Program-made: the position numbers and the translations under genes
In this document: positions 2 through 10,818 of the stretch, one piece after another
Numbering within the stretch: position 1 is the stretch's first letter
How the letters are laid out: each line of letters starts with the position of its first letter
The notes under the pieces: model-generated
What the model was told of the DNA's origin: nothing
Databases searched by the model: none
What the model saw: the letters and a program-made list of their open reading frames with translations, nothing else
Virus record (IMG/VR): IMGVR_UViG_3300047321_000238
Span: 183,884-247,883 of that record
Reading direction: 5' to 3' (one strand)
Length of the DNA: 64,000 nt

Positions 2-1189
2 GAATTCAATATTAAAGACTATGACATTGGAGACTTCTCAGGTGGAGTTAACGGTTCATCATCTTCTGGAGGTATATTTGGAGGTATGGGCTCTACAGTG
101 GTAAGAAATAAAATTGTAGAATATGCTAAAAATGCGGTTACTTTATGTGCAGAAGGGAAAGCTAAATATTCACAAGGTCAACGTATGTTACATGATGATA
201 AAGCTGTTAATGGTATTAGTTATTGGGATTGTTCTTCATTAGTTCAAGCAGCTTATGAAGCTGGAGGTATTACTGGAGTTACAGGAAATACATGTTCAGA
301 ATATCCGTCTTGTTTAGATACAAATGGTGGTTTACTTATCCCTATCGCGGAAGTAGATAAAGCTATACCTGGAGATATCGTATGGTTCTATTCAGGTAAC
401 AAACCAACCGATCAAGCAGGACTACAAACTATAGATTATAGTAATGCTAGTTTACTTCATCACGTTGCTATTTATATTGGAGACGGAAAGATTGCTCATG
501 CAAGTGGAGAGAATTCTACTCCTAATATTAAGATATCTGATTTATATAGTGAGGCAATAGCTTTTGGTAGACCAAAGGATTTAATTGAATTAGATAGAGC
601 TGCATCTACAGGAGCAAGTGGACCTGGTGTATGGAATAGAGAAGCTCAAGGAATAGATGATGAATTATGGAATGCATCATCAGTAGCTGATGAACAAGTA
701 CCTGCATTTATTGCTAATATGGCTAAGTACGGATATAAAGATGCTATTAATAATATAAGTAAAGAGTTTAATTTCGATCCTTATGTTATAGCAGCTATGG
801 CAACTATTGAAACTACAGGAAATCCTCATGAAGGTTCTACGTATAAAGGTATACTGCAAGTAGAAAATGGCTCTGAAGATCCAACAACTAATATAAGGCA
901 AGCTCTTGAAGGACTCATGGCAAGAAAACCTTACTTAGTACAAAATGGTTGGAGCGAAAATAATATTCACGTATTGGTATCTGCTCATAACTCTGGAGAA
1001 GGAACCGTAGGAGGAGCTAAAAAAGCTAGCAATTTAAATTTAGCATCTTGTAAAATACCAGAGATGGGAGAAGCTTTGTATAACTATGTAAAAGCAACTA
1101 CGTCTTGGGATCCTATGGAAAAGAAAACTTACACAACTAAAGTATTAAGAGCATATGCGTTACTTTATTCTCAAAACGCGTTAAGTTAA
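2..1189 (+). CDS. Virion-associated peptidoglycan hydrolase (NlpC/P60 peptidase plus lytic transglycosylase-like domain), 5'-truncated by the window edge
   Basis: Frame is open from position 2. NlpC/P60 motifs YWDCSSLV, PGDIVW, HHVAIY and IAHAS are present. SLT-like motifs AMATIETTGN, GILQV and SAHNSGEG follow. Confidence 0.85.
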   Translation, partial: EFNIKDYDIGDFSGGVNGSSSSGGIFGGMGSTVVRNKIVEYAKNAVTLCAEGKAKYSQGQRMLHDDKAVNGISYWDCSSLVQAAYEAGGITGVTGNTCSEYPSCLDTNGGLLIPIAEVDKAIPGDIVWFYSGNKPTDQAGLQTIDYSNASLLHHVAIYIGDGKIAHASGENSTPNIKISDLYSEAIAFGRPKDLIELDRAASTGASGPGVWNREAQGIDDELWNASSVADEQVPAFIANMAKYGYKDAINNISKEFNFDPYVIAAMATIETTGNPHEGSTYKGILQVENGSEDPTTNIRQALEGLMARKPYLVQNGWSENNIHVLVSAHNSGEGTVGGAKKASNLNLASCKIPEMGEALYNYVKATTSWDPMEKKTYTTKVLRAYALLYSQNALS

Positions 1190-1578: not shown

Positions 1579-1636
1579 TTGCTTACTTGCGAGTGCCACC
1601 GTATTTCTTTTTTTATTGCTTACTTACGAGTGCCAC
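1579..1636. repeat. Two 21-bp direct repeats (20/21 identical), 37-bp period
   Basis: TTGCTTACTTGCGAGTGCCAC at 1579-1599 and TTGCTTACTTACGAGTGCCAC at 1616-1636. Confidence 0.85.
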
Positions 1637-4600
1637 TATGAGATTGCTTCAAATGATTCCTCTGCTTCTTCTTCCATTATATCTATTTGTGGAAGTGTGT
1701 TAGTTTCTAGTACTGCGTTTGCTATTATCTTCCCGCTCGCGTCCTTCTTACCTTGGATAGTAATGTCTCTTATTACACTCATATCGAATGAACAACTTGT
1801 TTTCTTGTATAGGTTAGCAAATACTAATCCTTCAATTGATATTCCTTCATAACTGAAAGTTACAAATCCCATCATGTTTCCTTTCTTATCACACTTTTCC
1901 ATAACTTTTTCAAGTTTGAAAGTTTGTTGGAATGAATCATTTGTTTTGATTGTTTCCCACCATGGTTGATAAGTAATAGAAGTTCCAAGTACTTCAGTTT
2001 CTAATTCCATACATGCATTCTTATCATAAACTAAAGATACTAATCTTTCATCTTTATCTTTTCTAATATCCATTAGCTCATTCATAGTTTCATATCTATT
2101 AGTGTTATAGAAATCAAATGCTCCTGCTTTAATTAAACCAAACATAACTCTCTTGTTAGCATGTTTCTTATCCATTTTATCAAGAGTATCTTGAATACTT
2201 ACATAAGGTCTATTCTCTATTATATTGTTTATACTGTTTTCGCCTAACCCCTTTACTGATTTAAGTCCATAATATATTTCACCATTTACTTCAGTGAAAT
2301 CGTAGTCTGAATAATTCACATCGGGAGTGGTTATATTAATGTTGTAACCCTTAGCAGTTTTAGAATATAAATCTATTTTATCAGATTCACTTTGCATTGA
2401 AAGTAAAGCAGCAAAGAATTTAGCAGCGTGCTTTTTCTTCAAATACATTGTACATAAAGTAACTACGGCATAAGTCGCTGAATGAGATTTATTGAATAGG
2501 TATGAAGCGTATCCTTTAAGCTTATTCCAGAAATCTACTAGTTCCTCTTCAGTGTAACCATTGTTAATTCCCCCTACTACAGGTGAACCGTATTTACCCT
2601 TCGCATCGTATATGCATTGATCAGTATTCGTCTCATCATAATCTGCAGGAGGGTTACAATTTTTTTTACCATATATGAACAATCTCCTAGCAAGTTCCAT
2701 CTTATCAGCTTTCTTTTTAGCTAGTGCTTTACGAAGTATACTGTCAGCTTGAACATCGTCAAAGCCAGCTACTAGTTTAGAGATAAGCATACATTGTTCT
2801 TGGTATATAATTGTGTTATAGGTATCCTTAGTAATTTCTTCAGTCCCTCTAAGTTGTGGGATTGCTATTTCAAATCCGTTCTTTCTTTGAGCGTATTGAG
2901 TATGCATTCCTGCACTTAATGGACCTGGCCTACCTATAGCTAATATTGCACAGATATCATTAATGTCTGTTGGAATTATATCTGAAACTAAAGATTTAAA
3001 TAGATTACTTTCCATTTGGAATAATCCTTCTGTTTCTTTATTTTGTGTCATTTCAAATATCTCTTCATCATCTAAGTGATTTTCTATTTCTTTATATAAA
3101 TCATTCATTGTAGCATTTGAATCTACAGCCTTAATTGTTTTATCTAATACATCTAATGTTTTAAGTCCTAGTATATCAAGTTTGATTGCATTTAAGCTTT
3201 CTAATTGTGGACCTGTAAATAATGCAACTCTTATTCCATCAACAGTTCTTGTAGGGAAATAGTCTGTAACATCACATGGCATTACTAATATTCCTGATGC
3301 ATGAACTCCCATGTTTCTTGGAGTGCCTTCAAATCTTCTAGCTAATCTAAATAGTTCAGGATATCTATTTTCTATATCTTTAAATTTATTATACTTAGCT
3401 ATTAATTTATTGTAAGTAGCATCATCGCCTTCTGCTTTTGCTTCATTAGCACTTGTTTCTAATTTATCTAAGTCTTTAAACTTAATTGCTGGAGCATTGT
3501 CTGTTATATCATCAATATCTTTTGATATATTATTCATTATCATAAAGTCTACTCTAAGAACTCTACCGAAGTCTTTAAGTCCTGACTTAACTCCCATTAC
3601 TGTATAAGTTCCAATATGAGATACAGCAGCTTGACCATGAACTTCTTCTAGATGTTTTATAAGTTTATCTCTACCATAGTATGAGTAATCCATATCTACA
3701 TCTGGTGGATCAACTCTATCTTTAGTTAAGAATCTAAAGAATAATAAGTTATATTTAATTGGATCGATTATCTTAGTTGCACCATTAACGAATAGTGTAA
3801 GAGCTCCTGCCGCACTACCACGTCCTGGTCCTACTGGAATATCTTCTTGGTCACAGTATTCAACGTTCTCAAATATCTTTAATATATAAGGAGCAAATCC
3901 TTTAGAGTTTATGATATCTAATTCTTCATATAATCTTTTCTCATATTTGATTACATCTATTTCAGGATGTTCATTTTTATATTTATATAATCCTTTGTAT
4001 GATTTCAAAGTTAAGTATTGTTCAGTAGTTAATCCTTGAGGTACTTCTACTTTAGGGAATAAAGGTTTCTCTGAACCAATCTTTAAGCCATCTTCTATTC
4101 TACTTGCTATGACATTTGTATTAGATAAAGCATGCTTAATTATACTGTCCTTGATTTGATGTCTAGTTAAAGCACTTTCCATTTCATCATAACTTCTAAT
4201 CCAAAACTCTTCTTCGTAATGCATTCTGTCTTCATCGTCTTTAGACTTACCAATACCAACACATAATAAAGTATCATGGTCATCAGCATCTTCTCTTAGT
4301 GTGTAATGTACATCGTTAGTTGCAACTAATTCTATATCATGTTCTATAGATAATTCTATAAGTCTATGATTAACAAATTGTTGTTCAGCTACATTTAATG
4401 GTTGTATTTCTAAATAGAATCTATCTCCAAAGATACCTTTGTATTTTTCTATTAATGGATTTACTTGTTCTTCATGATGTCTTATACAATATGGTATCAT
4501 TCCACCTAAGCATGCAGATAAACATATAAGTCCTTCATTATACCTTTCAAGCATTTCAAAGTCACAACAGAATCTGCCATTGTAAGTGCATGTATCAGCC

Positions 4601-5091
4601 GCTTCTGATTGTAGTTTGATTAAGTTATTTAAACCTGTTTGGTTCATAGCTAATATTACAATATGGAATTGTTTAACTTGATATGTGTAATCAGAAATGA
4701 TTTCATTAATTTCTTTCTTAGTAATTTTCTTCTTACCAATCTTTTCAGGTATTTCAAGTCCAGTTGCTTCCGTATAATTTTTAATAGCTAACTCTCTTCT
4801 CTCATCAGCTGTTAATGATAATATACCAGTGTCCCAAGTTTGATACATTTCGCATCCGTATATAGGTTTGATTCCTTCTTCTTTACAAGCATCTTTAAAG
4901 TCTAACCAACCACCTATGTGATTATGGTCTGTAATTGCTATAGAAGTCATTCCTAGTTTTTTTGCTCTTTTAACTCCATCTATTATCTTGTTTCCTCCAT
5001 CTAGGAAACTATATGTTGTATGAACGTGTAAGTGTGTAAATTCTTCTTGTATTATTTCCATTGCATTTATCTCATCAAAAAAATTACTCAT
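1636..5091 (-). CDS. dnaE: DNA polymerase III alpha subunit (family C, DnaE type)
   Basis: PHP motifs HLHVHTTYSFLDG, AITDH and VATNDVHY; GPGRGSAAG; catalytic PPDVDMD; HASGI; KLDILGL; YLFNKSHS; C-terminal OB-like region. Confidence 0.97.
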   Translation of the reverse strand: MSNFFDEINAMEIIQEEFTHLHVHTTYSFLDGGNKIIDGVKRAKKLGMTSIAITDHNHIGGWLDFKDACKEEGIKPIYGCEMYQTWDTGILSLTADERRELAIKNYTEATGLEIPEKIGKKKITKKEINEIISDYTYQVKQFHIVILAMNQTGLNNLIKLQSEAADTCTYNGRFCCDFEMLERYNEGLICLSACLGGMIPYCIRHHEEQVNPLIEKYKGIFGDRFYLEIQPLNVAEQQFVNHRLIELSIEHDIELVATNDVHYTLREDADDHDTLLCVGIGKSKDDEDRMHYEEEFWIRSYDEMESALTRHQIKDSIIKHALSNTNVIASRIEDGLKIGSEKPLFPKVEVPQGLTTEQYLTLKSYKGLYKYKNEHPEIDVIKYEKRLYEELDIINSKGFAPYILKIFENVEYCDQEDIPVGPGRGSAAGALTLFVNGATKIIDPIKYNLLFFRFLTKDRVDPPDVDMDYSYYGRDKLIKHLEEVHGQAAVSHIGTYTVMGVKSGLKDFGRVLRVDFMIMNNISKDIDDITDNAPAIKFKDLDKLETSANEAKAEGDDATYNKLIAKYNKFKDIENRYPELFRLARRFEGTPRNMGVHASGILVMPCDVTDYFPTRTVDGIRVALFTGPQLESLNAIKLDILGLKTLDVLDKTIKAVDSNATMNDLYKEIENHLDDEEIFEMTQNKETEGLFQMESNLFKSLVSDIIPTDINDICAILAIGRPGPLSAGMHTQYAQRKNGFEIAIPQLRGTEEITKDTYNTIIYQEQCMLISKLVAGFDDVQADSILRKALAKKKADKMELARRLFIYGKKNCNPPADYDETNTDQCIYDAKGKYGSPVVGGINNGYTEEELVDFWNKLKGYASYLFNKSHSATYAVVTLCTMYLKKKHAAKFFAALLSMQSESDKIDLYSKTAKGYNINITTPDVNYSDYDFTEVNGEIYYGLKSVKGLGENSINNIIENRPYVSIQDTLDKMDKKHANKRVMFGLIKAGAFDFYNTNRYETMNELMDIRKDKDERLVSLVYDKNACMELETEVLGTSITYQPWWETIKTNDSFQQTFKLEKVMEKCDKKGNMMGFVTFSYEGISIEGLVFANLYKKTSCSFDMSVIRDITIQGKKDASGKIIANAVLETNTLPQIDIMEEEAEESFEAIS

Positions 5092-5772: not shown

Positions 5773-6060
5773 ATGGATTATACTAATTTAGTTAAATTCG
5801 TCCCAGAACAACTATTAATTCTTGTAGCTGCATTAGGTGTGGTTGGGTACTTTGTAAAGAGTACTAACAAAATTCAAGATGCTTATATACCATTTATTTT
5901 AATGGTGTTAGGTGTTGCAGGTTCTTTGTTAATGATGGGGCTTAATGTTACTTCTGTATTACAAGGTATCATTTCTGCCGCAGTTGCCGTTCTTGGTAAT
6001 AATATTGTTAAACAAGGTTCTGAAATATTAGGCACTACAGATACAACAGATGTAAAATAG
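5773..6060 (+). CDS. Phage holin
   Basis: 95 aa with three hydrophobic segments; KIQDAYIPFIL and LQGIISAAVAV patterns typical of Firmicutes phage holins; GGAGG RBS. Confidence 0.85.
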   Translation: MDYTNLVKFVPEQLLILVAALGVVGYFVKSTNKIQDAYIPFILMVLGVAGSLLMMGLNVTSVLQGIISAAVAVLGNNIVKQGSEILGTTDTTDVK

Positions 6061-6066
6061 TTGCAC

Positions 6067-6097
6067 AAAAAGAAGAAGCCGTAATGGCTTCTTTTTC
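6067..6097. terminator. Bidirectional intrinsic terminator
   Basis: AGAAGCC-N5-GGCTTCT stem flanked by A and T tracts between convergent genes. Confidence 0.8.
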
Positions 6098-7020
6098 TAT
6101 TCTACATTACTTTTTGTACGTTGCATCATTGCGTTCTGAATGTTCGCACAGATCAACGTGTTCTCTAATAAACTACACAATGCTAAGTTTACATATTCCC
6201 AAACAGGTAGAACTTTTAAATAAGTTAAATAGTCAAATTTATATTTGTAATCTAGATTGTTATATTGAAGATTTCCATTAATTTTATTTGCACGGTTTTT
6301 ATGAATATCAAGGTCAAAGATATAAGTGGACTTGTTATTTATGCCGTGTATAATTCTTTGTTCTATGTGGTAGTTAACATCGTCTAATAAATCGTATCCT
6401 ATAGAGTTAGCTTTCTTATTAGCTATTAATATAATATTTGAATCATAAAATAAAGATGATAAGTTATGAGTATTATTATTTGCAATTATAATAGTAGACT
6501 TTTCTCTTCTTAATATTTCAGTTAAGTATTTTATATAGTGATTATTATTATCGTCTGTTACTATTAAGACCTTGCTCTTATCTAATGGCACTTTCTCGTA
6601 ACGAAGTAAAGATAAGATACCTTTTGCTATGCACGGTTGTGTAATATCTTCTCTAGTCATTAAAGATCCTACATTAGGAATAGATAAACAATCTACATCT
6701 TTAAAAGGTACAATATTATTCGCAAGGTTTTCATTGGGTGTTTCAAGGATAATGCCGTGAACATTAAAGTCATTATTATACTTATCAATGACTTGTATGG
6801 CCTTCTCCTTATTGTTACTGAACACGTCAACAACATCAAGTTTAATATTGCAATATTCACAATATTGTTTTAACACATCCATATAGTATTTATACTTTGA
6901 ACTTCTAGTTGTTCTTATTATAACTAAAGAGGGGTATACTCTTTGCATTCTTAGCAGACTAGTTCTTATCCTTGCATTCTTTAAAATGTTTTCTATTATT
7001 ATTTTAGTATCAATAATCAT
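6097..7020 (-). CDS. FolD-like (methylene-THF dehydrogenase/cyclohydrolase fold) protein with degenerate catalytic and cofactor motifs
   Basis: FolD landmarks YNNDFNVHGII, PFKDVD, PCIAKGILSLL, IFDLD and LLENT; 307 aa, close to full FolD length. Confidence 0.8.
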   Translation of the reverse strand: MIIDTKIIIENILKNARIRTSLLRMQRVYPSLVIIRTTRSSKYKYYMDVLKQYCEYCNIKLDVVDVFSNNKEKAIQVIDKYNNDFNVHGIILETPNENLANNIVPFKDVDCLSIPNVGSLMTREDITQPCIAKGILSLLRYEKVPLDKSKVLIVTDDNNNHYIKYLTEILRREKSTIIIANNNTHNLSSLFYDSNIILIANKKANSIGYDLLDDVNYHIEQRIIHGINNKSTYIFDLDIHKNRANKINGNLQYNNLDYKYKFDYLTYLKVLPVWEYVNLALCSLLENTLICANIQNAMMQRTKSNVE

Positions 7021-7121
7021 ATTTAATTTGCCTCCCTATTCTAATTTGTCGTTTTAGTATTCATTAATAGCTATTAATTTATTCATTATTACAACAATTA
7101 AAACAAGGAAAACTATGCCAG

Positions 7122-7496
7122 TTAATCTAGATATTCCACTTTGAGATCTGCTGATATTAAACTTAATGAATACACCATTTCATCGTCATTGTTTAATCTT
7201 ACTTCTTTACGCATTACGTAAGGACAATATAAGTGTATTGTAACTTGTCCATCTGGTGAACATATTATTAGACTTTGTCCTTCTTTTAAATGAGCAATGT
7301 TTTGATCTTTAGTTATTAAATCAACTACACAGTTTTTTCTTCCTACAGAATGAAAGTCTGGACCTTGACTGGATCCCATAGTGAATACAGGAGCAGTCTC
7401 TCTTGTGATTTGATAACTAACAGAGTCTGCTGTAATTGTTATTTCTGTTGCATTTTCTAATTTATTTATTTGTTGTACATAACTTAATAATTCCAT
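7122..7496 (-). CDS. Hypothetical protein, possibly a diverged tail-tube-like structural paralog
   Basis: SVSYQITRETAPVFTMGS resembles a motif recalled from large Firmicutes phage structural proteins (unverified). Confidence 0.45.
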   Translation of the reverse strand: MELLSYVQQINKLENATEITITADSVSYQITRETAPVFTMGSSQGPDFHSVGRKNCVVDLITKDQNIAHLKEGQSLIICSPDGQVTIHLYCPYVMRKEVRLNNDDEMVYSLSLISADLKVEYLD

Positions 7497-7849
7497 TATA
7501 TTATCTCCTCAGTTGTAAAAGATGCAGTTATATTTATACTTCCCCTGTCTGTAATGATTATTGGTACTTGTATTTTATCTATGGAAGATGTGACTATATC
7601 TATAGTTTTGTTACCATTAGTAAATGTACAATTCTTTATGTTGTCTCCAAACATGCCTATTCCATCTATGTGTAACTGCAATATACATATCATTCTATTC
7701 CCATGTTCGTTTATAGCCTCTACATTTATGAAAGTGTTTATTGGTGATCCATTGTAAATAAAATCGTTATTTTCAAATTCTATATCTATAGCTGTTGGAT
7801 AGCTATTAATTAAATATATTTCAGTATTTATATGTTTTAATAATTCCAT
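7496..7849 (-). CDS. Hypothetical protein
   Basis: AAGGAGG RBS places the start at MELLKHINTE rather than the longer ORF-track start. Confidence 0.7.
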   Translation of the reverse strand: MELLKHINTEIYLINSYPTAIDIEFENNDFIYNGSPINTFINVEAINEHGNRMICILQLHIDGIGMFGDNIKNCTFTNGNKTIDIVTSSIDKIQVPIIITDRGSINITASFTTEEII

Positions 7850-7899
7850 AATTTCCTCCTTAATAAGCATGCTTTTTTGTAAAAGAATAGACACTAGAC

Positions 7900-9684
7900 T
7901 TAAGCAGTCATAATGTCTATTACATTTAATGTGTATGCTCCATTCATAAATGATTTAGTAATTTCTCCAGCAATATGAATTGTAGATGGGCAATGTAATT
8001 CTTCTATATATTTAGAACCAAATCCCCATGCCCAAACGTCATGTCTTTGCTTTCCTTGTTTAACTGTGAACTTAATGTTTTCAGGATTATTCTTTGAAAG
8101 AGTATATCCTAATACTTTTAAATCAGTTAATGCAAATGTAGGATTCTTAAATTCCTTACCATTGCAAGGGAACATATTAACTATTGCATAGATTACTTTA
8201 CTTAAATGATTTAATGAAATGATTTCATCTATCTTTAATACTTCTTCGAATATTTCATCTGTACCATCTAATAGTTCGTCTTGTATTATTATAGCTTGAT
8301 TAAAGTATGTCTTTATCAATTCTATCTTATCTATATCAAATGTGCACACACACGCTGCAGAGTGACCACCGTATTCGATTATAAGTCCTAAGTGTTTCAT
8401 TTGCTTAAATAGTTCTATCATATCAATGTTATTATAAGTTCTTACTGAACCATGATAATGTCCATCAGCAGTCATTGTAGCGACTATAGCAGGTTTCTTA
8501 AATCCTTCTGCTATCTTTCCTGCTATGATTCCAAGTATTCCATTTGGATATTCATTAGTTGTAAAGATACAAACTTCATCTTTATCATAGTTCATTTTAG
8601 CAATCTTAGTTTGTGCTTTCTTTGTTATAGCTTTTCTATCTTCATTAGTTTTCATAATGTTCATTACATCTTGTTTGATAGTATCAGTTACAAAAAATAA
8701 CTTACTTGCTAATGCTGTGTCACCCATTCTACCGCAAGCATTAATCATTGGAGCAACTGACCAAAGAATATCTTTAGAAGTCATTACATCGATCTTAGCT
8801 AATTCTTTTAATACTTTAATACCTTGTGGGCAATCTTCTCCGTTGATTATTTCTAATCCGTATTGTACTAAAGCTACGTTTTCTTCATTCATAGGCATTA
8901 CATCTGCAAGTGTAGCAAATGCTAAGTATGGAGTGTAGTTCATCATATCATATATATTAAAATTCTCTTGAACCAATTGTGCTACTTTAAATGCTACTCC
9001 GCATCCACATAGATGTTTGAATGTATCATCTTGTTCGATATCTGCATTATGAGGATTAACTACAAGACAATCTGGCGTTTCACCTTTTTTAGATGGGTGA
9101 TGGTCTGTAACTACTACTTCTATTCCATTGTCTTTAAGAAGTTTAACTTCTTCTTTTTTAGTTATACCATTATCTACAGTAATAACTAATACATCTTTAG
9201 TTCCTTTGTTAGTAATTACAGATGTACAGAAAGGAATGTTTATTCCATATCCATTTATTCTATTTGGGAAGATAACTATAACTTCACAAGTAGTTAATGC
9301 TCTCAATACGTCTGCAAGTAAGTATCCACTTGTAACACCATCTACATCGTAGTCAGCATAGATATATATTATAGCATTAGGATTATTTAAATATGTTGTA
9401 ATCAAATCAGCAGATGCTTTAGCATTAACTAAATCATAAGGATTTGTAATAGAAACATTAATGTTGTTAAATAGAGTGTCAACCTTAGTTTGATTGTCAA
9501 TGTTTCTATTTATTAAAATGCAACTTATTAATTTTTCTACTTCTTCCTTAGCTACATTTCTAAATAAATCTTCTTTAGTTACATTTAATGTGTAACACAA
9601 TCTAGCTATTAATTTATCTTTATCTATAAGGTTTGAAACATTGATTATCTTTTCATCTAGTTGTTTGCTTGTTTCCCATTTCAT
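7900..9684 (-). CDS. recJ: RecJ-like ssDNA exonuclease (DHH family)
   Basis: IYADYDVDGVTS, PNRINGYG, ITVDNGI, VTDHH, LCGCGVAFK, ATLADVMP, APMINACGRM, GSVR and YGGHSAA. Confidence 0.95.
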   Translation of the reverse strand: MKWETSKQLDEKIINVSNLIDKDKLIARLCYTLNVTKEDLFRNVAKEEVEKLISCILINRNIDNQTKVDTLFNNINVSITNPYDLVNAKASADLITTYLNNPNAIIYIYADYDVDGVTSGYLLADVLRALTTCEVIVIFPNRINGYGINIPFCTSVITNKGTKDVLVITVDNGITKKEEVKLLKDNGIEVVVTDHHPSKKGETPDCLVVNPHNADIEQDDTFKHLCGCGVAFKVAQLVQENFNIYDMMNYTPYLAFATLADVMPMNEENVALVQYGLEIINGEDCPQGIKVLKELAKIDVMTSKDILWSVAPMINACGRMGDTALASKLFFVTDTIKQDVMNIMKTNEDRKAITKKAQTKIAKMNYDKDEVCIFTTNEYPNGILGIIAGKIAEGFKKPAIVATMTADGHYHGSVRTYNNIDMIELFKQMKHLGLIIEYGGHSAACVCTFDIDKIELIKTYFNQAIIIQDELLDGTDEIFEEVLKIDEIISLNHLSKVIYAIVNMFPCNGKEFKNPTFALTDLKVLGYTLSKNNPENIKFTVKQGKQRHDVWAWGFGSKYIEELHCPSTIHIAGEITKSFMNGAYTLNVIDIMTA

Positions 9685-9930: not shown

Positions 9931-10818
9931 CTAACCTGTAGGAAGTATTGCTTTCTTGCCACTTTTTCGTGTTCTCTTTATGCTTTCTAATTCAATACCT
10001 AAGTTCTCTGCTATTTTCTTAGCAGCACTTCTTCTACGTTGATTAACTGTATTTATATGCATTCCGAAATGGTCTGCTATTTGTTTATCTTTCCATTCTT
10101 CAAGATAGTATTTAATTAATATCTTTCTATCTAACGGAGTAAGGTTAGAGAATATATCTGAACAGTTACTTCCCATTACCCAATCTGTATTTGGAATACC
10201 AGTTAAGTCTTCATAGTAGTTGTCCTCATAAGAGTTTTCTATATCGTAATCTGTTTCTCCGTTTATACAATCTTCATATTCTAAATTCTTGTAAGCTATA
10301 TTGATTGGATCTTTTATAAAGTTCTTAATGAATCTACATACTTCGTATCTGTAAGCATTGTATACATAGGAACAAAAGTTTCTACCCATTTGCTTGTACC
10401 TTTTTGCAATAGTTAGCAATAACGTTTGCAGGTCTGATATAATCTCAACTTCCGTAAGAGAGCCATAGGTTTCTTTTATAAAATTGAATTTAACATATAT
10501 ATCATTTCTATAAGTAGCTTTTTGTTTCTTACGCTTAAGTGCTTTCTGTAAGTTCTTATCACTTATGAAGTTACATACGAACAGTTTCATTTCTTTATCA
10601 TTCCAATCGATTTGACCAGACGTTAATAATGAAGCGTACTTTTTAAATAATGGTATAAATTTCTCAAGTAATTGTTGACCAGCTATTTTTGCTTGTGTAA
10701 CCTCTAAAGGTGTAGCACCTTCATGGAATTGTTTTTGAAATTGCATAACATTGTCTTCGATATCCTGCCACTCTTTAAGTCTTTCATTATAGTTCTCATC
10801 TGCTTCTGAATAATACAT
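9931..10818 (-). CDS. Phage sigma-70-family RNA polymerase sigma factor
   Basis: Region-2-like EIISDLQTLLLTIAKRY...NFCSYV and region-4 HTH LTPLDRKILIKYYLEEWKDKQIADHFGMHINTVNQRR. Confidence 0.85.
   Translation of the reverse strand: MYYSEADENYNERLKEWQDIEDNVMQFQKQFHEGATPLEVTQAKIAGQQLLEKFIPLFKKYASLLTSGQIDWNDKEMKLFVCNFISDKNLQKALKRKKQKATYRNDIYVKFNFIKETYGSLTEVEIISDLQTLLLTIAKRYKQMGRNFCSYVYNAYRYEVCRFIKNFIKDPINIAYKNLEYEDCINGETDYDIENSYEDNYYEDLTGIPNTDWVMGSNCSDIFSNLTPLDRKILIKYYLEEWKDKQIADHFGMHINTVNQRRRSAAKKIAENLGIELESIKRTRKSGKKAILPTG

What the first reader, a model, noticed from the sequence alone, without database searches (positions are those of the whole stretch)
6097..7020. Full-length FolD homologue that has lost its catalytic and cofactor motifs
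Seen, compared with recalled FolD motifs: the YxxxK lysine aligns to Leu (YMDVL), the GILVQLP glutamine to Glu (GIILETP), KDVDG to KDVDC, the GRSxxVG dinucleotide loop to TDDNNNH, and PVPGGVGP to PVWEYVNL. The 307-codon frame and RBS are intact. Inference: this is a maintained pseudoenzyme rather than a metabolic gene. It could bind folates, poison host FolD dimers, or have a structural or anti-defence role. Automated annotation would miscall it as an auxiliary metabolic gene.
Basis: partly seen in the sequence, partly recalled or inferred. Interest (0 to 1): 0.6.

Follow-up and report, generated by a model that had tools for sequence, protein, structure and literature searches.

The report
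Dead FolD enzyme kept by jumbo phages
A 248-kb phage carries a full-length copy of the folate enzyme FolD that has lost its catalytic lysine and its whole NADP pocket yet is kept under purifying selection, so it is a maintained pseudoenzyme that annotation pipelines wrongly list as a viral metabolic gene.

Summary
Window 6097-7020 (minus strand) is an intact 307-codon gene with an RBS and a terminator. Both Pfam FolD domains match. The AlphaFold model (pLDDT 94.6) superposes on solved FolDs (TM 0.75-0.85).

The functional residues are gone:
- Catalytic Lys56 is Leu and Gln100 is Glu.
- In the NADP pocket, Arg173/Ser174 are Asp/Asp, His196/Ser197 are Asn/Asn, and the glycines at 178, 217, 237 and 274 now carry side chains.
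- Gly276 of the PGGVGP loop is deleted.
- KDVDC is a normal variant, not a loss.

Ten relatives from independent metagenomes share these changes. They form one clade (100/100) on a 1.8 substitutions/site stem. The clade nests among phage FolDs with intact motifs, and one of those occupies the same slot (recJ, FolD, holin) in a related 157-kb phage. So an active phage FolD was converted once and then retained. dN/dS is at most about 0.17, like neighbouring replication genes.

A FolD-type homodimer is predicted (0.63 against 0.00 for controls). The genome encodes ThyX and no other folate enzyme that I searched for.

The function is not established. My preferred guess is a non-catalytic folate-binding dimer that supports thymidylate supply. 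It is a new variant of a known kind, of moderate interest.

The parts
6097..7020 (-). FolD-like pseudoenzyme gene, 307 codons plus stop (protein P0001)
   Evidence: ORF. Pfam PF00763 and PF02882 above gathering cut-offs. PHROG 7320. AF2 pLDDT 94.6. Foldseek top hits are all FolD, TM 0.75-0.85.
6580..7020 (-). N-terminal (former catalytic, folate-site) domain, residues 1-147
   Evidence: PF00763 match over residues 3-110. Domain limits taken by analogy to LmDHCH 5-147 / 148-298 (PMC3368264).
6100..6579 (-). C-terminal (former NADP-binding Rossmann) domain, residues 148-307, heavily remodelled
   Evidence: PF02882 match over residues 116-217 only. Residue table. Clade-specific conserved residues cluster here.
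6871..6885 (-). YMDVL (residues 46-50): Tyr52 equivalent kept, catalytic Lys56 replaced by Leu
   Evidence: Lys in 104 of 121 canonical and 5 of 5 sister proteins; Leu in 10 of 11 and Phe in 1 of 11 in the dead clade.
6736..6756 (-). GIILETP (residues 89-95): Gln100 replaced by Glu, Leu101 by Thr
   Evidence: Gln in 111 of 121 canonical and 5 of 5 sister proteins; Glu in 9 and Asp in 2 of 11 in the dead clade.
6688..6702 (-). KDVDC (residues 107-111): Lys122 and the pterin-binding Asp125 equivalent retained; Cys is a normal variant
   Evidence: Cys in 38 of 121 canonical proteins; Asp retained in 8 of 11 dead-clade members.
6538..6558 (-). TDDNNNH (residues 155-161) in place of the G-R-S-x-x-V-G dinucleotide loop; Arg173/Ser174 replaced by Asp/Asp, Gly178 by Ile163
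   Evidence: Codons checked by hand.
6478..6495 (-). Strand TIIIAN (residues 176-181): predicted antiparallel dimer strand. It ends in Asn181-Asn182 where FolD has the 2'-phosphate-binding His196-Ser197.
   Evidence: closest contacts 178:178, 176:179. Dimer description in PMC3368264.
6343..6396 (-). Inserted helix of about 16-18 residues (residues 209-226). Absent from canonical FolD and already present in shorter form in the intact sister phage FolDs.
   Evidence: Alignments A3 and A4. Helix 209-224 in the model.
6184..6207 (-). PVWEYVNL (residues 272-279) in place of PVPGGVGP; Gly273 replaced by Glu, Gly274 by Tyr, Gly276 deleted
7031..7036 (-). Shine-Dalgarno GGGAGG, 10 nt upstream of the ATG
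   Evidence: Read directly.
6073..6093 (-). Terminator-like hairpin (8 bp stem, T-run) directly after the stop codon, between the FolD-like gene and the convergent holin gene
7900..9684 (-). Context: RecJ-like exonuclease gene, the conserved upstream anchor of the syntenic slot
   Evidence: PHROG 2484, E 1.8e-85. Synteny.
5773..6060 (+). Context: holin gene, convergent, the conserved downstream anchor of the slot
   Evidence: PHROG 1129, E 5e-25. A holin follows the gene on the opposite strand in L003, L005, L010, L014, L015, L017, L018 and L019.

Best explanation
The gene encodes a FolD-derived pseudoenzyme.

Shown here:
- The protein has the complete two-domain FolD fold.
- The catalytic Lys and Gln are replaced.
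- The dinucleotide pocket is abolished. Four conserved glycine positions now carry side chains, one is deleted, and the phosphate-binding Arg/Ser and His/Ser are replaced by Asp/Asp and Asn/Asn.
- These changes arose once, in a lineage of phage FolDs whose other members keep all motifs and sit at the same locus.
- The gene has since been kept intact under purifying selection in the replication-gene module of a family of roughly 130-260-kb, AT-rich phages.

Inferred:
- It cannot bind NADP(H) or carry out either the dehydrogenase or the cyclohydrolase reaction (about 0.85).
- It still forms the FolD-type homodimer (about 0.65).
- It acts by binding something rather than by catalysis.

My preferred specific mechanism (about 0.35) is a non-catalytic folate-binding dimer. 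The two residues that position the substrate are the Tyr that stacks on the p-aminobenzoate ring and the Asp that holds the pterin. Both are kept, together with Lys122, in the window's subclade, while the chemistry residues are lost. The protein would then hold or hand over reduced folate without oxidising it. That would favour the phage's own flavin-dependent thymidylate synthase ThyX, the only other folate-dependent enzyme found among those searched for in the genome, during DNA replication.
For: Fold and family.

Residue losses, scored against the literature list (PMC3368264). Glycine content is 2.0% against 7.0% in canonical FolDs.

Single origin from an active phage FolD:
- The dead clade is monophyletic at 100/100, with a stem of 1.82 substitutions/site.
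- It nests (97/93) with intact-motif P0012, P0014, P0016, P0029 and P0034.
- P0014 lies in the same primase, DnaB, DUF1064, sigma, RecJ, FolD, holin arrangement in a 156.7-kb contig.
- The divergent dead members P0011, P0013 and P0010 occupy the same slot.

Selection:
- Median NG86 dN is 0.235 and dS is 1.29, giving omega 0.165, within the range of RecJ, DnaB and DUF1064.
- The gene is retained across phages whose core proteins are only 46-62% identical.
- The replacement residues are themselves conserved: Leu50, Asp156, Tyr162, Asn201, Ser206, His240 and others.

Dimer: ipSAE 0.63 against a best control of 0.00. That mark was reached by 21 of 30 proteins solved as pairs of one chain and 0 of 23 solved as single chains. 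The three runs agree in at least 95% of contacts, and partner pLDDT is at least 76. The interface is the antiparallel strand 176-181 plus helices 114-124, 161-172 and 183-193, as described for FolD.

Folate link: Tyr46, Lys107 and Asp110 are retained. ThyX is present at G000 170147-170854. ThyA, DHFR, SHMT, formyltransferase, FTHFS and a second FolD are absent.
Against: - No biochemical data exist, and no RNA data set holds the gene.
- Folate binding is doubtful. Only 2 of the 7 key substrate residues survive. Leu101 and the Gly273/Gly276 loop, which also contact the substrate, are lost.
- The most divergent dead-clade members have lost Asp125 (P0011 Asn, P0013 Tyr), and P0013 has also lost Tyr52. 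Folate binding therefore cannot be the function shared by the whole clade.
- The gene evolves faster than every neighbouring replication gene, for example 35% identity between L017 and L018 against 60-72% for RecJ, DnaB and sigma. Constraint is real but looser.
- dS is saturated, so omega is approximate.
- The predicted dimer may reflect the model's memory of solved FolD dimers, and interface residues are not more conserved than the rest of the protein.
- ThyX is 13 kb outside the window and is not a neighbour. Co-occurrence with ThyX in the relatives could not be checked.
Confidence: 0.55

Rival explanations
1. Pure protein scaffold or regulator without any folate ligand. The FolD fold and dimer would be kept only as a platform that binds another phage or host protein, for instance a replisome or nucleotide-supply component. 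The gene would be expressed with the replication genes it sits among.
For: - The gene holds a fixed position inside the primase, DnaB, sigma, RecJ ... PolIII-alpha module, on the same strand, with a terminator after it.
- Folate-site residues are not conserved in the most divergent members.
- There is a precedent within the family. [quoted passage not shown]
Against: - No partner was identified.
- The small ORFs directly upstream are a fast-evolving paralogue array of variable copy number, not a conserved partner.
- Net charge shows no consistent trend that would suggest nucleic-acid binding.
- Tyr46, Lys107 and Asp110 are retained at 50-65% overall identity in the window's subclade, which is unexplained if the folate site is irrelevant.
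Confidence: 0.25
2. Neo-functionalised protein. The remodelled former NADP cleft plus the inserted helix would form a new ligand-binding or catalytic site, so the protein would be a new enzyme or sensor rather than a dead one.
For: - The replacements at NADP-contact positions are not random. They are clade-specific and nearly invariant polar or aromatic residues: Asp156, Tyr162, Asn181, Asn201, Ser206, Gly208, Tyr209, Asp214, Asn216, His225, His240, Asn250, Gln252, Tyr253, Asn254.
- The block at residues 195-208 is the most conserved part of the protein (0.94 identity over strand 195-201 in 11 sequences).
- The very long stem branch (1.82 substitutions/site) fits a burst of adaptive change.
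Against: - Replacing glycines with bulky residues at four pocket positions is what simple occlusion of a pocket looks like.
- No similarity to any family other than FolD was found.
Confidence: 0.2
3. Dominant-negative decoy. The protein would heterodimerise with the host's FolD through the conserved edge strand and inhibit or mislocalise it, diverting one-carbon units to thymidylate.
For: - The predicted interface uses the same elements as canonical FolD dimers.
- The pairing strand TIIIAN resembles canonical TVT(I/V)(C/A)H.
- The phage ThyX would profit from spared methylene-THF.
Against: [quoted passage not shown]
- Interface helices have diverged from the canonical consensus. Leu is replaced by Arg171, and Glu168 and Arg172 are conserved.
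- Sister phages carry an apparently ACTIVE FolD at the same locus, which argues that these phages profit from FolD activity rather than from its inhibition.
- The host is unknown, so no pair could be tested.
Confidence: 0.1
4. Residual or altered FolD chemistry, for example a cyclohydrolase-only enzyme using the neighbouring Lys51 (Tyr+5) and Glu93.
For: - Lys51 directly follows Leu50 and is conserved in 9 of 11 members.
- Of the 121 canonical FolD homologues aligned from the hit list, 17 also lack the canonical Lys while keeping an intact GRS loop, and many of them have Lys at the next positions.
Against: - Gln100, Leu101, Thr148 and the Gly273/Gly276 substrate loop are all changed as well.
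- NCBIfam FolD equivalog scores are a fifth of the cut-off.
- A dehydrogenase is excluded without a dinucleotide site.
Confidence: 0.06
5. A decaying gene on its way to loss, with no function.
For: - It evolves faster than all neighbouring genes.
- Pfam no longer recognises the most divergent member, P0013.
Against: - The full-length frame is open in 11 of 11 representatives from independent samples, across deep phage divergence.
- dN/dS is about 0.17 or less.
- The model is confidently folded (pLDDT 94.6).
- New residues are conserved within the clade.
Confidence: 0.03

Closest known systems
Canonical bifunctional FolD (methylene-THF dehydrogenase / methenyl-THF cyclohydrolase), e.g. PDB 5o22, 1b0a, 3p2o, 3l07, 1a4i
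   Same: - The same two-domain fold (TM 0.75-0.85).
- Both Pfam domains match.
- The Tyr52, Lys122 and Asp125 equivalents are present.
- The same predicted dimer geometry, through an antiparallel edge strand.
   Different: - Only 18-23% identity.
- Lys56, Gln100, Leu101, Thr148, the G-R-S-x-x-V-G loop, His196/Ser197, Gly217, Gly237 and the PGGVGP loop are all replaced or deleted.
- Two insertions in the C-domain.
- 74 bits against a 355-bit equivalog cut-off.
Intact-motif phage FolDs of the sister lineage (P0012, P0014, P0016, P0029, P0034)
   Same: - Nearest relatives on the tree (97/93).
- The same genomic slot next to recJ and a holin gene in a related large phage.
- They already carry the KDVDC variant and the N-R-S variant of the loop. 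P0012, P0014 and P0016 also carry part of the C-domain insertions.
   Different: - They keep Tyr52, Lys56, Gln100, Leu101, Asp125, Thr148, Arg173, Ser174, Gly178, His196, Ser197, Gly217 and Gly276 in 5 of 5.
- They score about 243-255 bits on NCBIfam FolD models, against 74 for the window protein.
- They are presumably active auxiliary metabolic enzymes.
N-terminal dehydrogenase/cyclohydrolase-like domain of mitochondrial MTHFD1L
   Same: A FolD-homologous domain that is retained although the protein is a monofunctional 10-formyl-THF synthetase (PMC5718140). That the domain is inactive through loss of key residues is from my own knowledge of the literature and was not checked here.
   Different: MTHFD1L's dead domain is fused to an active synthetase domain in a eukaryote. 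Here the dead FolD is a free-standing protein of a bacteriophage with no synthetase partner in the genome.
Human MTHFD2, non-catalytic role
   Same: A FolD-family protein whose effect on proliferation does not need its dehydrogenase activity and which co-localises with DNA replication sites (PMC4602236). The phage gene likewise sits among replication genes.
   Different: MTHFD2 is a fully active enzyme that moonlights. The phage protein has lost the catalytic apparatus altogether. The resemblance is only a lead.

Membership tests
FolD (bifunctional methylene-THF dehydrogenase/cyclohydrolase) | Two-domain FolD fold; both Pfam domains above the gathering score | tested here: met
   PF00763 scores 46.6 (cut-off 32.8) and PF02882 scores 46.2 (cut-off 27). 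AF2 pLDDT 94.6. Foldseek TM 0.75-0.85 to FolD structures.
FolD (bifunctional methylene-THF dehydrogenase/cyclohydrolase) | YxxxK motif with the catalytic Lys56 | tested here: not met
   Tyr46 is present. Lys is replaced by Leu50, or Val49 in the alternative register. None of the 11 clade members has Lys.
FolD (bifunctional methylene-THF dehydrogenase/cyclohydrolase) | Gln100 and Leu101, which act with Lys56 | tested here: not met
   Glu93 and Thr94.
FolD (bifunctional methylene-THF dehydrogenase/cyclohydrolase) | Substrate-positioning Tyr52 and Asp125 | tested here: met
   Tyr46 and Asp110 are retained. Within the clade Tyr is kept in 10 of 11 and Asp in 8 of 11.
FolD (bifunctional methylene-THF dehydrogenase/cyclohydrolase) | PGGVGP loop (Gly273, Gly276) contacting the substrate | tested here: not met
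   PVWEYVNL: Gly273 is Glu, Gly274 is Tyr, Gly276 is deleted.
FolD (bifunctional methylene-THF dehydrogenase/cyclohydrolase) | NADP(H) site: G-R-S-x-x-V-G loop, Thr148, His196/Ser197, Ala215-x-Gly217, Gly237 | tested here: not met
   TDDNNNH/YI, Ile131, Asn181/Asn182, Ala200-Asn-Lys202 and Asp238. Only about 2-4 of the 13 listed contact residues are kept.
FolD (bifunctional methylene-THF dehydrogenase/cyclohydrolase) | Score above an NCBIfam FolD equivalog cut-off | tested here: not met
   The best score is 74.3 bits against a cut-off of 355. A canonical control, P0015, scores 373 against 355.
FolD (bifunctional methylene-THF dehydrogenase/cyclohydrolase) | Homodimer through the NADP-domain edge strand | tested here: inconclusive
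   Predicted with ipSAE 0.63 against a best control of 0.00, with a canonical interface. The pass may be from the model's memory of solved FolD dimers, and the interface is not specially conserved.
FolD (bifunctional methylene-THF dehydrogenase/cyclohydrolase) | Dehydrogenase and cyclohydrolase activity | not testable with these tools
   Needs purified protein.
Pseudoenzyme (inactive homologue maintained by selection) | Clear homology to an enzyme family together with loss of catalytic and cofactor residues | tested here: met
Pseudoenzyme (inactive homologue maintained by selection) | Intact reading frame kept under purifying selection in several lineages | tested here: met
   All 11 frames are open. 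The median omega is 0.165 with dS saturated. The gene is retained across phages with 46-62% core-protein identity.
Pseudoenzyme (inactive homologue maintained by selection) | Demonstrated lack of the ancestral activity | not testable with these tools
   Needs an assay.
Viral auxiliary metabolic gene (AMG) | A phage-borne gene encoding a catalytically competent host-type metabolic enzyme | tested here: not met
   The gene is phage-borne (248-kb record with terminal repeats), but the catalytic apparatus is lost. The sister lineage would qualify.

The most novel reading that the evidence does not exclude
The protein is not dead but re-tooled. After one burst of change, the former NADP cleft and the lineage-specific inserted helix would form a new conserved polar site (Asp156, Tyr162, Asn181, Asn201, Ser206, His225, His240, Asn250, Gln252, Tyr253, Asn254). 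That site would bind a new ligand or catalyse a new reaction needed for replication of these large phages. This would be a documented case of a viral auxiliary metabolic enzyme evolving in place into a protein with a different function.
Probability: 0.2. Interest if true: 0.8.

Novelty: new variant of a known kind. Interest (0 to 1): 0.55.

Why it matters
There are three reasons.

1. It is a caution for virome studies. Pfam- or KEGG-style pipelines name this protein as the bifunctional FolD enzyme, as JGI does for three homologues, and would count it as a viral auxiliary metabolic gene. It almost certainly cannot perform either reaction.

2. The locus offers an unusually clean natural experiment in pseudoenzyme evolution. 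Related phages carry either an intact-motif FolD or the dead form in the same genomic slot. The conversion happened once, on a very long branch, and the product has been kept for a long time. Comparing the two forms should reveal what a FolD scaffold is good for once catalysis is removed.

3. If the protein still binds folate, or acts with the replication genes that surround it, it would link one-carbon metabolism to phage DNA synthesis in a non-catalytic way. That would echo the unexplained non-enzymatic role of human MTHFD2 at replication sites.

Tried and rejected
- Scan of IMG/VR viral contigs with the family alignment: no relative found apart from the window's own record.
- Scan of 185,579 species genomes: only one ordinary FolD at 23% identity, in a Flavobacterium MAG. 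So there is no prophage copy and no host clue.
- Phage GenBank collection (tblastn): only distant hits at 19-24%. The one I inspected (MT835478) is a canonical FolD next to formate-THF ligase, so ordinary 'phage' FolDs in that database are intact.
- Expression: no RNA run holds the stretch. The only full holder is a rhizosphere metagenome that is probably the source. Read laying was therefore not used, and expression is untested.
- A conserved small-protein partner upstream: rejected. The upstream ORFs are a variable paralogue array confined to the window's subgroup.
- Interface conservation as support for dimerisation: no enrichment (0.64 against 0.65).
- Charge or pI as a hint of nucleic-acid binding: no trend.
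- Tubulin, seen next to the polymerase gene in relative L005: absent from the window's genome.
- Host identification: no tRNA in the window. The nearest isolate by PolIII-alpha is Moorella phage MTATph1 at 34%, which suggests only a Bacillota-type host.
- ML (GY94) pairwise dS values were wildly saturated (2 to 37), so only NG86 values are quoted, as approximate.
- Heterodimer with host FolD and a complex with ThyX were not submitted to complex prediction. Only one job was allowed, the host is unknown, and the homodimer was the best-founded pair.
- Model coordinates are not exposed, so I could not test whether the clade-specific residues line a single cavity.
Full report
**1. What is in the sequence**

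Window 6097-7020 holds a 307-codon open frame on the minus strand.
- GGGAGG lies 10 nt upstream of the ATG (read).
- An 8-bp GC-containing hairpin with a T-run lies directly after the stop, at 6093..6073.
- The gene is the last in a run of co-directional genes: primase, DnaB, DUF1064, a sigma-like factor, RecJ and two small ORFs.
- It converges on a holin gene (5773-6060, plus strand). A 1151-residue PolIII-alpha gene follows further on.
- The window is the last 64 kb of a 247,883-bp IMG/VR virus record with direct terminal repeats. GC content is about 30%.

**2. It is a FolD homologue with the FolD fold**

- Both Pfam FolD domains match above their gathering scores.
- PHROG 7320 matches over residues 2-290.
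- 24 solved FolD/MTHFD sequences match at E of 0.01 or better; the best is 3l07 at 5.9e-14.
- An AlphaFold2 model built on a 137-sequence alignment has mean pLDDT 94.6 and pTM 0.91.
- Its 50 best Foldseek matches in the PDB are all FolD/MTHFD structures, with TM 0.72-0.85.

**3. The functional residues are gone**

An open-access structural paper lists the functional residues in human numbering (PMC3368264).
- Seven residues are key for substrate binding and catalysis: Tyr52, Lys56, Gln100, Leu101, Asp125, Gly273 and Gly276.
- Thirteen residues form the NADP site: Thr148, Arg173, Ser174, Ile176, His196, Ser197, Ala215, Thr216, Gln218, Met221, Cys236, Gly237 and Ile238.

I located these columns through the motifs in a 137-sequence alignment. 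The human sequence itself was not available from a tool, so the numbering rests on the motif patterns.

| Position (human numbering) | Canonical FolDs with the expected residue (of 121) | Window protein |
|---|---|---|
| Tyr52 | 118 | Tyr46 (kept) |
| Lys56 | 104 | Leu50 |
| Gln100 | 111 | Glu93 |
| Leu101 | 85 | Thr94 |
| Asp125 | 117 | Asp110 (kept) |
| Gly273 | 110 | Glu275 |
| Gly276 | 118 | deleted |
| Thr148 | 118 | Ile131 |
| Arg173 | 91 | Asp156 |
| Ser174 | 110 | Asp157 |
| Ile176 | 66 (Leu 32) | His161 |
| Gly178 | 119 | Ile163 |
| His196 | 102 | Asn181 |
| Ser197 | 96 | Asn182 |
| Gly217 | 115 | Lys202 |
| Met221 | Phe/Leu/Met | Ser206 |
| Gly237 | 108 | Asp238 |

- Two of the seven substrate residues survive, and about two to four of the thirteen NADP residues. 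That is no better than the protein's background identity to the FolD consensus.
- Glycine content falls from 7.0% to 2.0%.
Cys occurs there in 38 of 121 canonical proteins.
- An alternative HMMER register puts Val49 rather than Leu50 opposite the lysine. Either way no lysine is there.
- Lys51 follows immediately and is conserved in 9 of 11 members.
- Seventeen other FolD homologues in the hit list also lack the canonical Lys while keeping the GRS loop. I therefore keep a small probability for residual cyclohydrolase-type chemistry.

**4. The state is shared, old and derived**

- A word-based search found six homologues of 59-66% identity.
- A full profile search of 1.84 billion representatives found more distant ones: P0009, P0010, P0011 and P0013.
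- All eleven carry the same set of losses.
- Next in the hit list come P0012, P0014 and P0016. These keep every catalytic and nearly every cofactor residue, and they already have the C-domain insertions.

On a maximum-likelihood tree of 42 sequences:
- The eleven dead proteins form one clade (100/100) on a stem of 1.82 substitutions per site.
- That clade nests (97/93) with the intact P0012, P0014, P0016, P0029 and P0034.
- All outgroups are intact, so the loss is derived and happened once.

**5. Same locus in related phages**

- Contigs carrying the homologues (up to 258,779 bp) show the same order: primase, DnaB, DUF1064, sigma, RecJ, small ORFs, FolD-like, holin on the opposite strand, PolIII-alpha.
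- The divergent dead members occupy the same slot.
- The intact P0014 sits in the same arrangement in a 156,743-bp contig that also carries tail-fibre genes. P0012 also lies next to a holin gene.
- By core-protein identity, the phage with the intact gene is the most distant. RecJ is 40-43% identical, against 46-51% between the window group and L017/L018; DnaB is 50-52% against 55-62%.
- The simplest history is that an ancestral phage carried an active FolD here, and one descendant lineage converted it and kept it.

**6. Selection**

Pairwise NG86 estimates for the seven closest genes give the values below, alongside the flanking genes of the same genomes.

| Gene | Median omega |
|---|---|
| FolD-like | 0.165 (median dN 0.235, dS 1.29) |
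| RecJ | 0.215 |
| DnaB | 0.150 |
| DUF1064 | 0.149 |
| primase | 0.113 |
| p237 (unnamed conserved 237-residue protein) | 0.074 |
| sigma | 0.053 |

- dS is saturated, so true omega is probably lower. ML estimates were unstable.
- The protein is the fastest-evolving of the seven conserved replication-module genes compared. Mean identity is 0.67 against 0.72-0.85 for the neighbours. Between L017 and L018 it is 0.35 against 0.52-0.72.
- It is nevertheless clearly constrained.
- Many replacement residues are nearly invariant within the clade and rare or absent in canonical FolD: Leu50, Asp156, Tyr162, Tyr192, Asn195, Asn201, Ser206, Gly208, Tyr209, Asp214, Asn216, His225, His240, Asn250, Gln252, Tyr253 and Asn254. 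This rules out simple decay.

**7. Quaternary structure**

A two-copy prediction reached ipSAE 0.63, with three runs at 0.62-0.66.
- The best of three controls scored 0.00.
- That mark was reached by 21 of 30 proteins solved as pairs of one chain and by 0 of 23 proteins solved as single chains.
- The runs agree in at least 95% of contacts, and partner pLDDT is at least 76.
- The interface is the antiparallel pairing of strand 176-181 (closest contact 178:178) plus helices 114-124, 161-172 and 183-193.
- This matches the published description of the FolD dimer: alpha5, alpha7, alpha8 and antiparallel beta6 strands.
- Because FolD dimers are solved, the pass may show likeness only.
- Interface residues are not more conserved than the rest of the protein.

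**8. Metabolic context**

- The genome encodes a flavin-dependent thymidylate synthase ThyX (208 bits), 13 kb upstream of the window.
- It has no ThyA, DHFR, SHMT, formyltransferase, formate-THF ligase, class I/II ribonucleotide reductase or second FolD.
- ThyX consumes methylene-THF, the FolD substrate. This is established biochemistry and was not tested here.

**9. How it most likely works**

Shown:
- Fold, loss of the catalytic and cofactor apparatus, single origin from an intact phage FolD, and long-term maintenance.

Inferred:
- The protein has no FolD activity (about 0.85).
- It is a homodimer (about 0.65).

Beyond that the function is open. The options I weigh are these.
- **Non-catalytic folate binder (about 0.35, my preferred reading).** The two residues that orient the substrate, Tyr52 and Asp125, are kept along with Lys122, while the chemistry residues are lost. 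The only folate consumer found in the genome is ThyX. Against this, the Gly273/Gly276 loop and Leu101 are lost, and P0011 and P0013 have lost Asp125.
- **Ligand-free scaffold or regulator acting with the replication module (about 0.25).** The non-catalytic, replication-site-associated behaviour of human MTHFD2 is a precedent (PMC4602236).
- **New ligand or catalytic site in the remodelled cleft (about 0.2).**
- **Decoy for host FolD (about 0.1).** This is weakened by the remoteness of the active site from the interface, and by sister phages carrying an apparently active enzyme.
- **Residual chemistry (about 0.06).**
- **Decay (about 0.03).**

**10. Comparison with what is known**

- The protein is a homologue of FolD but fails most of its defining functional features, and it fails the NCBIfam equivalog cut-offs: 74 against 355 bits. 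The sister proteins score 243-255 and a canonical control scores 373. I do not file it as FolD.
- It fits the definition of a pseudoenzyme as far as sequence can show.
- A dead FolD-like domain is known in the monofunctional MTHFD1L (plus my own knowledge).
- FolD is listed among viral auxiliary metabolic genes in virome surveys.
- I found no paper describing a free-standing inactive FolD in phages.
- I therefore rate it a new variant of a known kind.

**11. Limits**

- There is no biochemistry, no expression data and no host.
- The nearest isolate by polymerase is Moorella phage MTATph1 at 34%, and the source is probably a rhizosphere metagenome.
- dS is saturated.
- Residue numbering was mapped through motifs.
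- Model coordinates could not be inspected.

Noticed in passing
window 7122-7894 (-); L003 9165-9909; L006 9191-9904; L010 8092-9912; L011 282-1005: Between recJ and the FolD-like gene lies a tandem array of fast-evolving paralogous ORFs of about 115-130 residues. Copy number varies from 1 to 5 among close relatives, with pairwise identity of 23-63%. They have no Pfam match; one has weak PHROG matches of unknown function. This could be a diversification hot-spot, for example for host-interaction or counter-defence genes.
   Followed up: partly
L003 12628-17287; L004 5079-9738; L018 11460-16854 (compare window 1636-5091): The PolIII-alpha gene is one 1151-codon frame in the window. In relatives it is split into two ORFs by an inserted HNH-repeat ORF (L003/L004) or an HTH/LAGLIDADG-like ORF (L018). 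That is consistent with homing-endonuclease or intron-type insertions in the polymerase gene.
   Followed up: no
L005 15510-16616 (-): A tubulin-family (PF00091) gene lies next to the polymerase gene in one relative. The window's own 248-kb genome has no tubulin match.
   Followed up: yes
L003 17366-19075; L004 9817-11526: A 569-residue methyl-accepting chemotaxis-type protein (4HB_MCP, HAMP and MCPsignal domains) is encoded in the 258-kb relative next to the polymerase gene. This is an unusual gene for a phage.
   Followed up: no
L002 (G000 168647-172354): 66-467, 1062-1466, 1492-2346: The phage ThyX gene is preceded by a MazF/PemK-type toxin gene (66 bits) and a BRCT-domain protein gene (41 bits).
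   Followed up: no
window 9931-10818 (-): A 295-residue sigma-factor-like protein (region 4 only by Pfam and PHROG) is the most conserved gene of the module (82-87% identity among close relatives, omega 0.05). This suggests that the phage redirects host RNA polymerase.
   Followed up: no
alignment A4: proteins P0040, P0047, P0060, P0087, P0110, P0122, P0147, P0154 and others: Seventeen FolD homologues in the hit list keep an intact GRS dinucleotide loop but have Ile, Gln, Leu, Val, Arg or Ala at the catalytic Lys56 column, often with Lys one or two positions later. This could be a separate variant class (dehydrogenase-only?) or a register shift in the helix.
   Followed up: partly
window 86-1189 (+): The first ORF of the window matches tail-protein families (PHROG 329 minor tail protein, PHROG 1015 tail protein with lysin activity). 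It lies directly beside the replication module, on the opposite strand.
   Followed up: no
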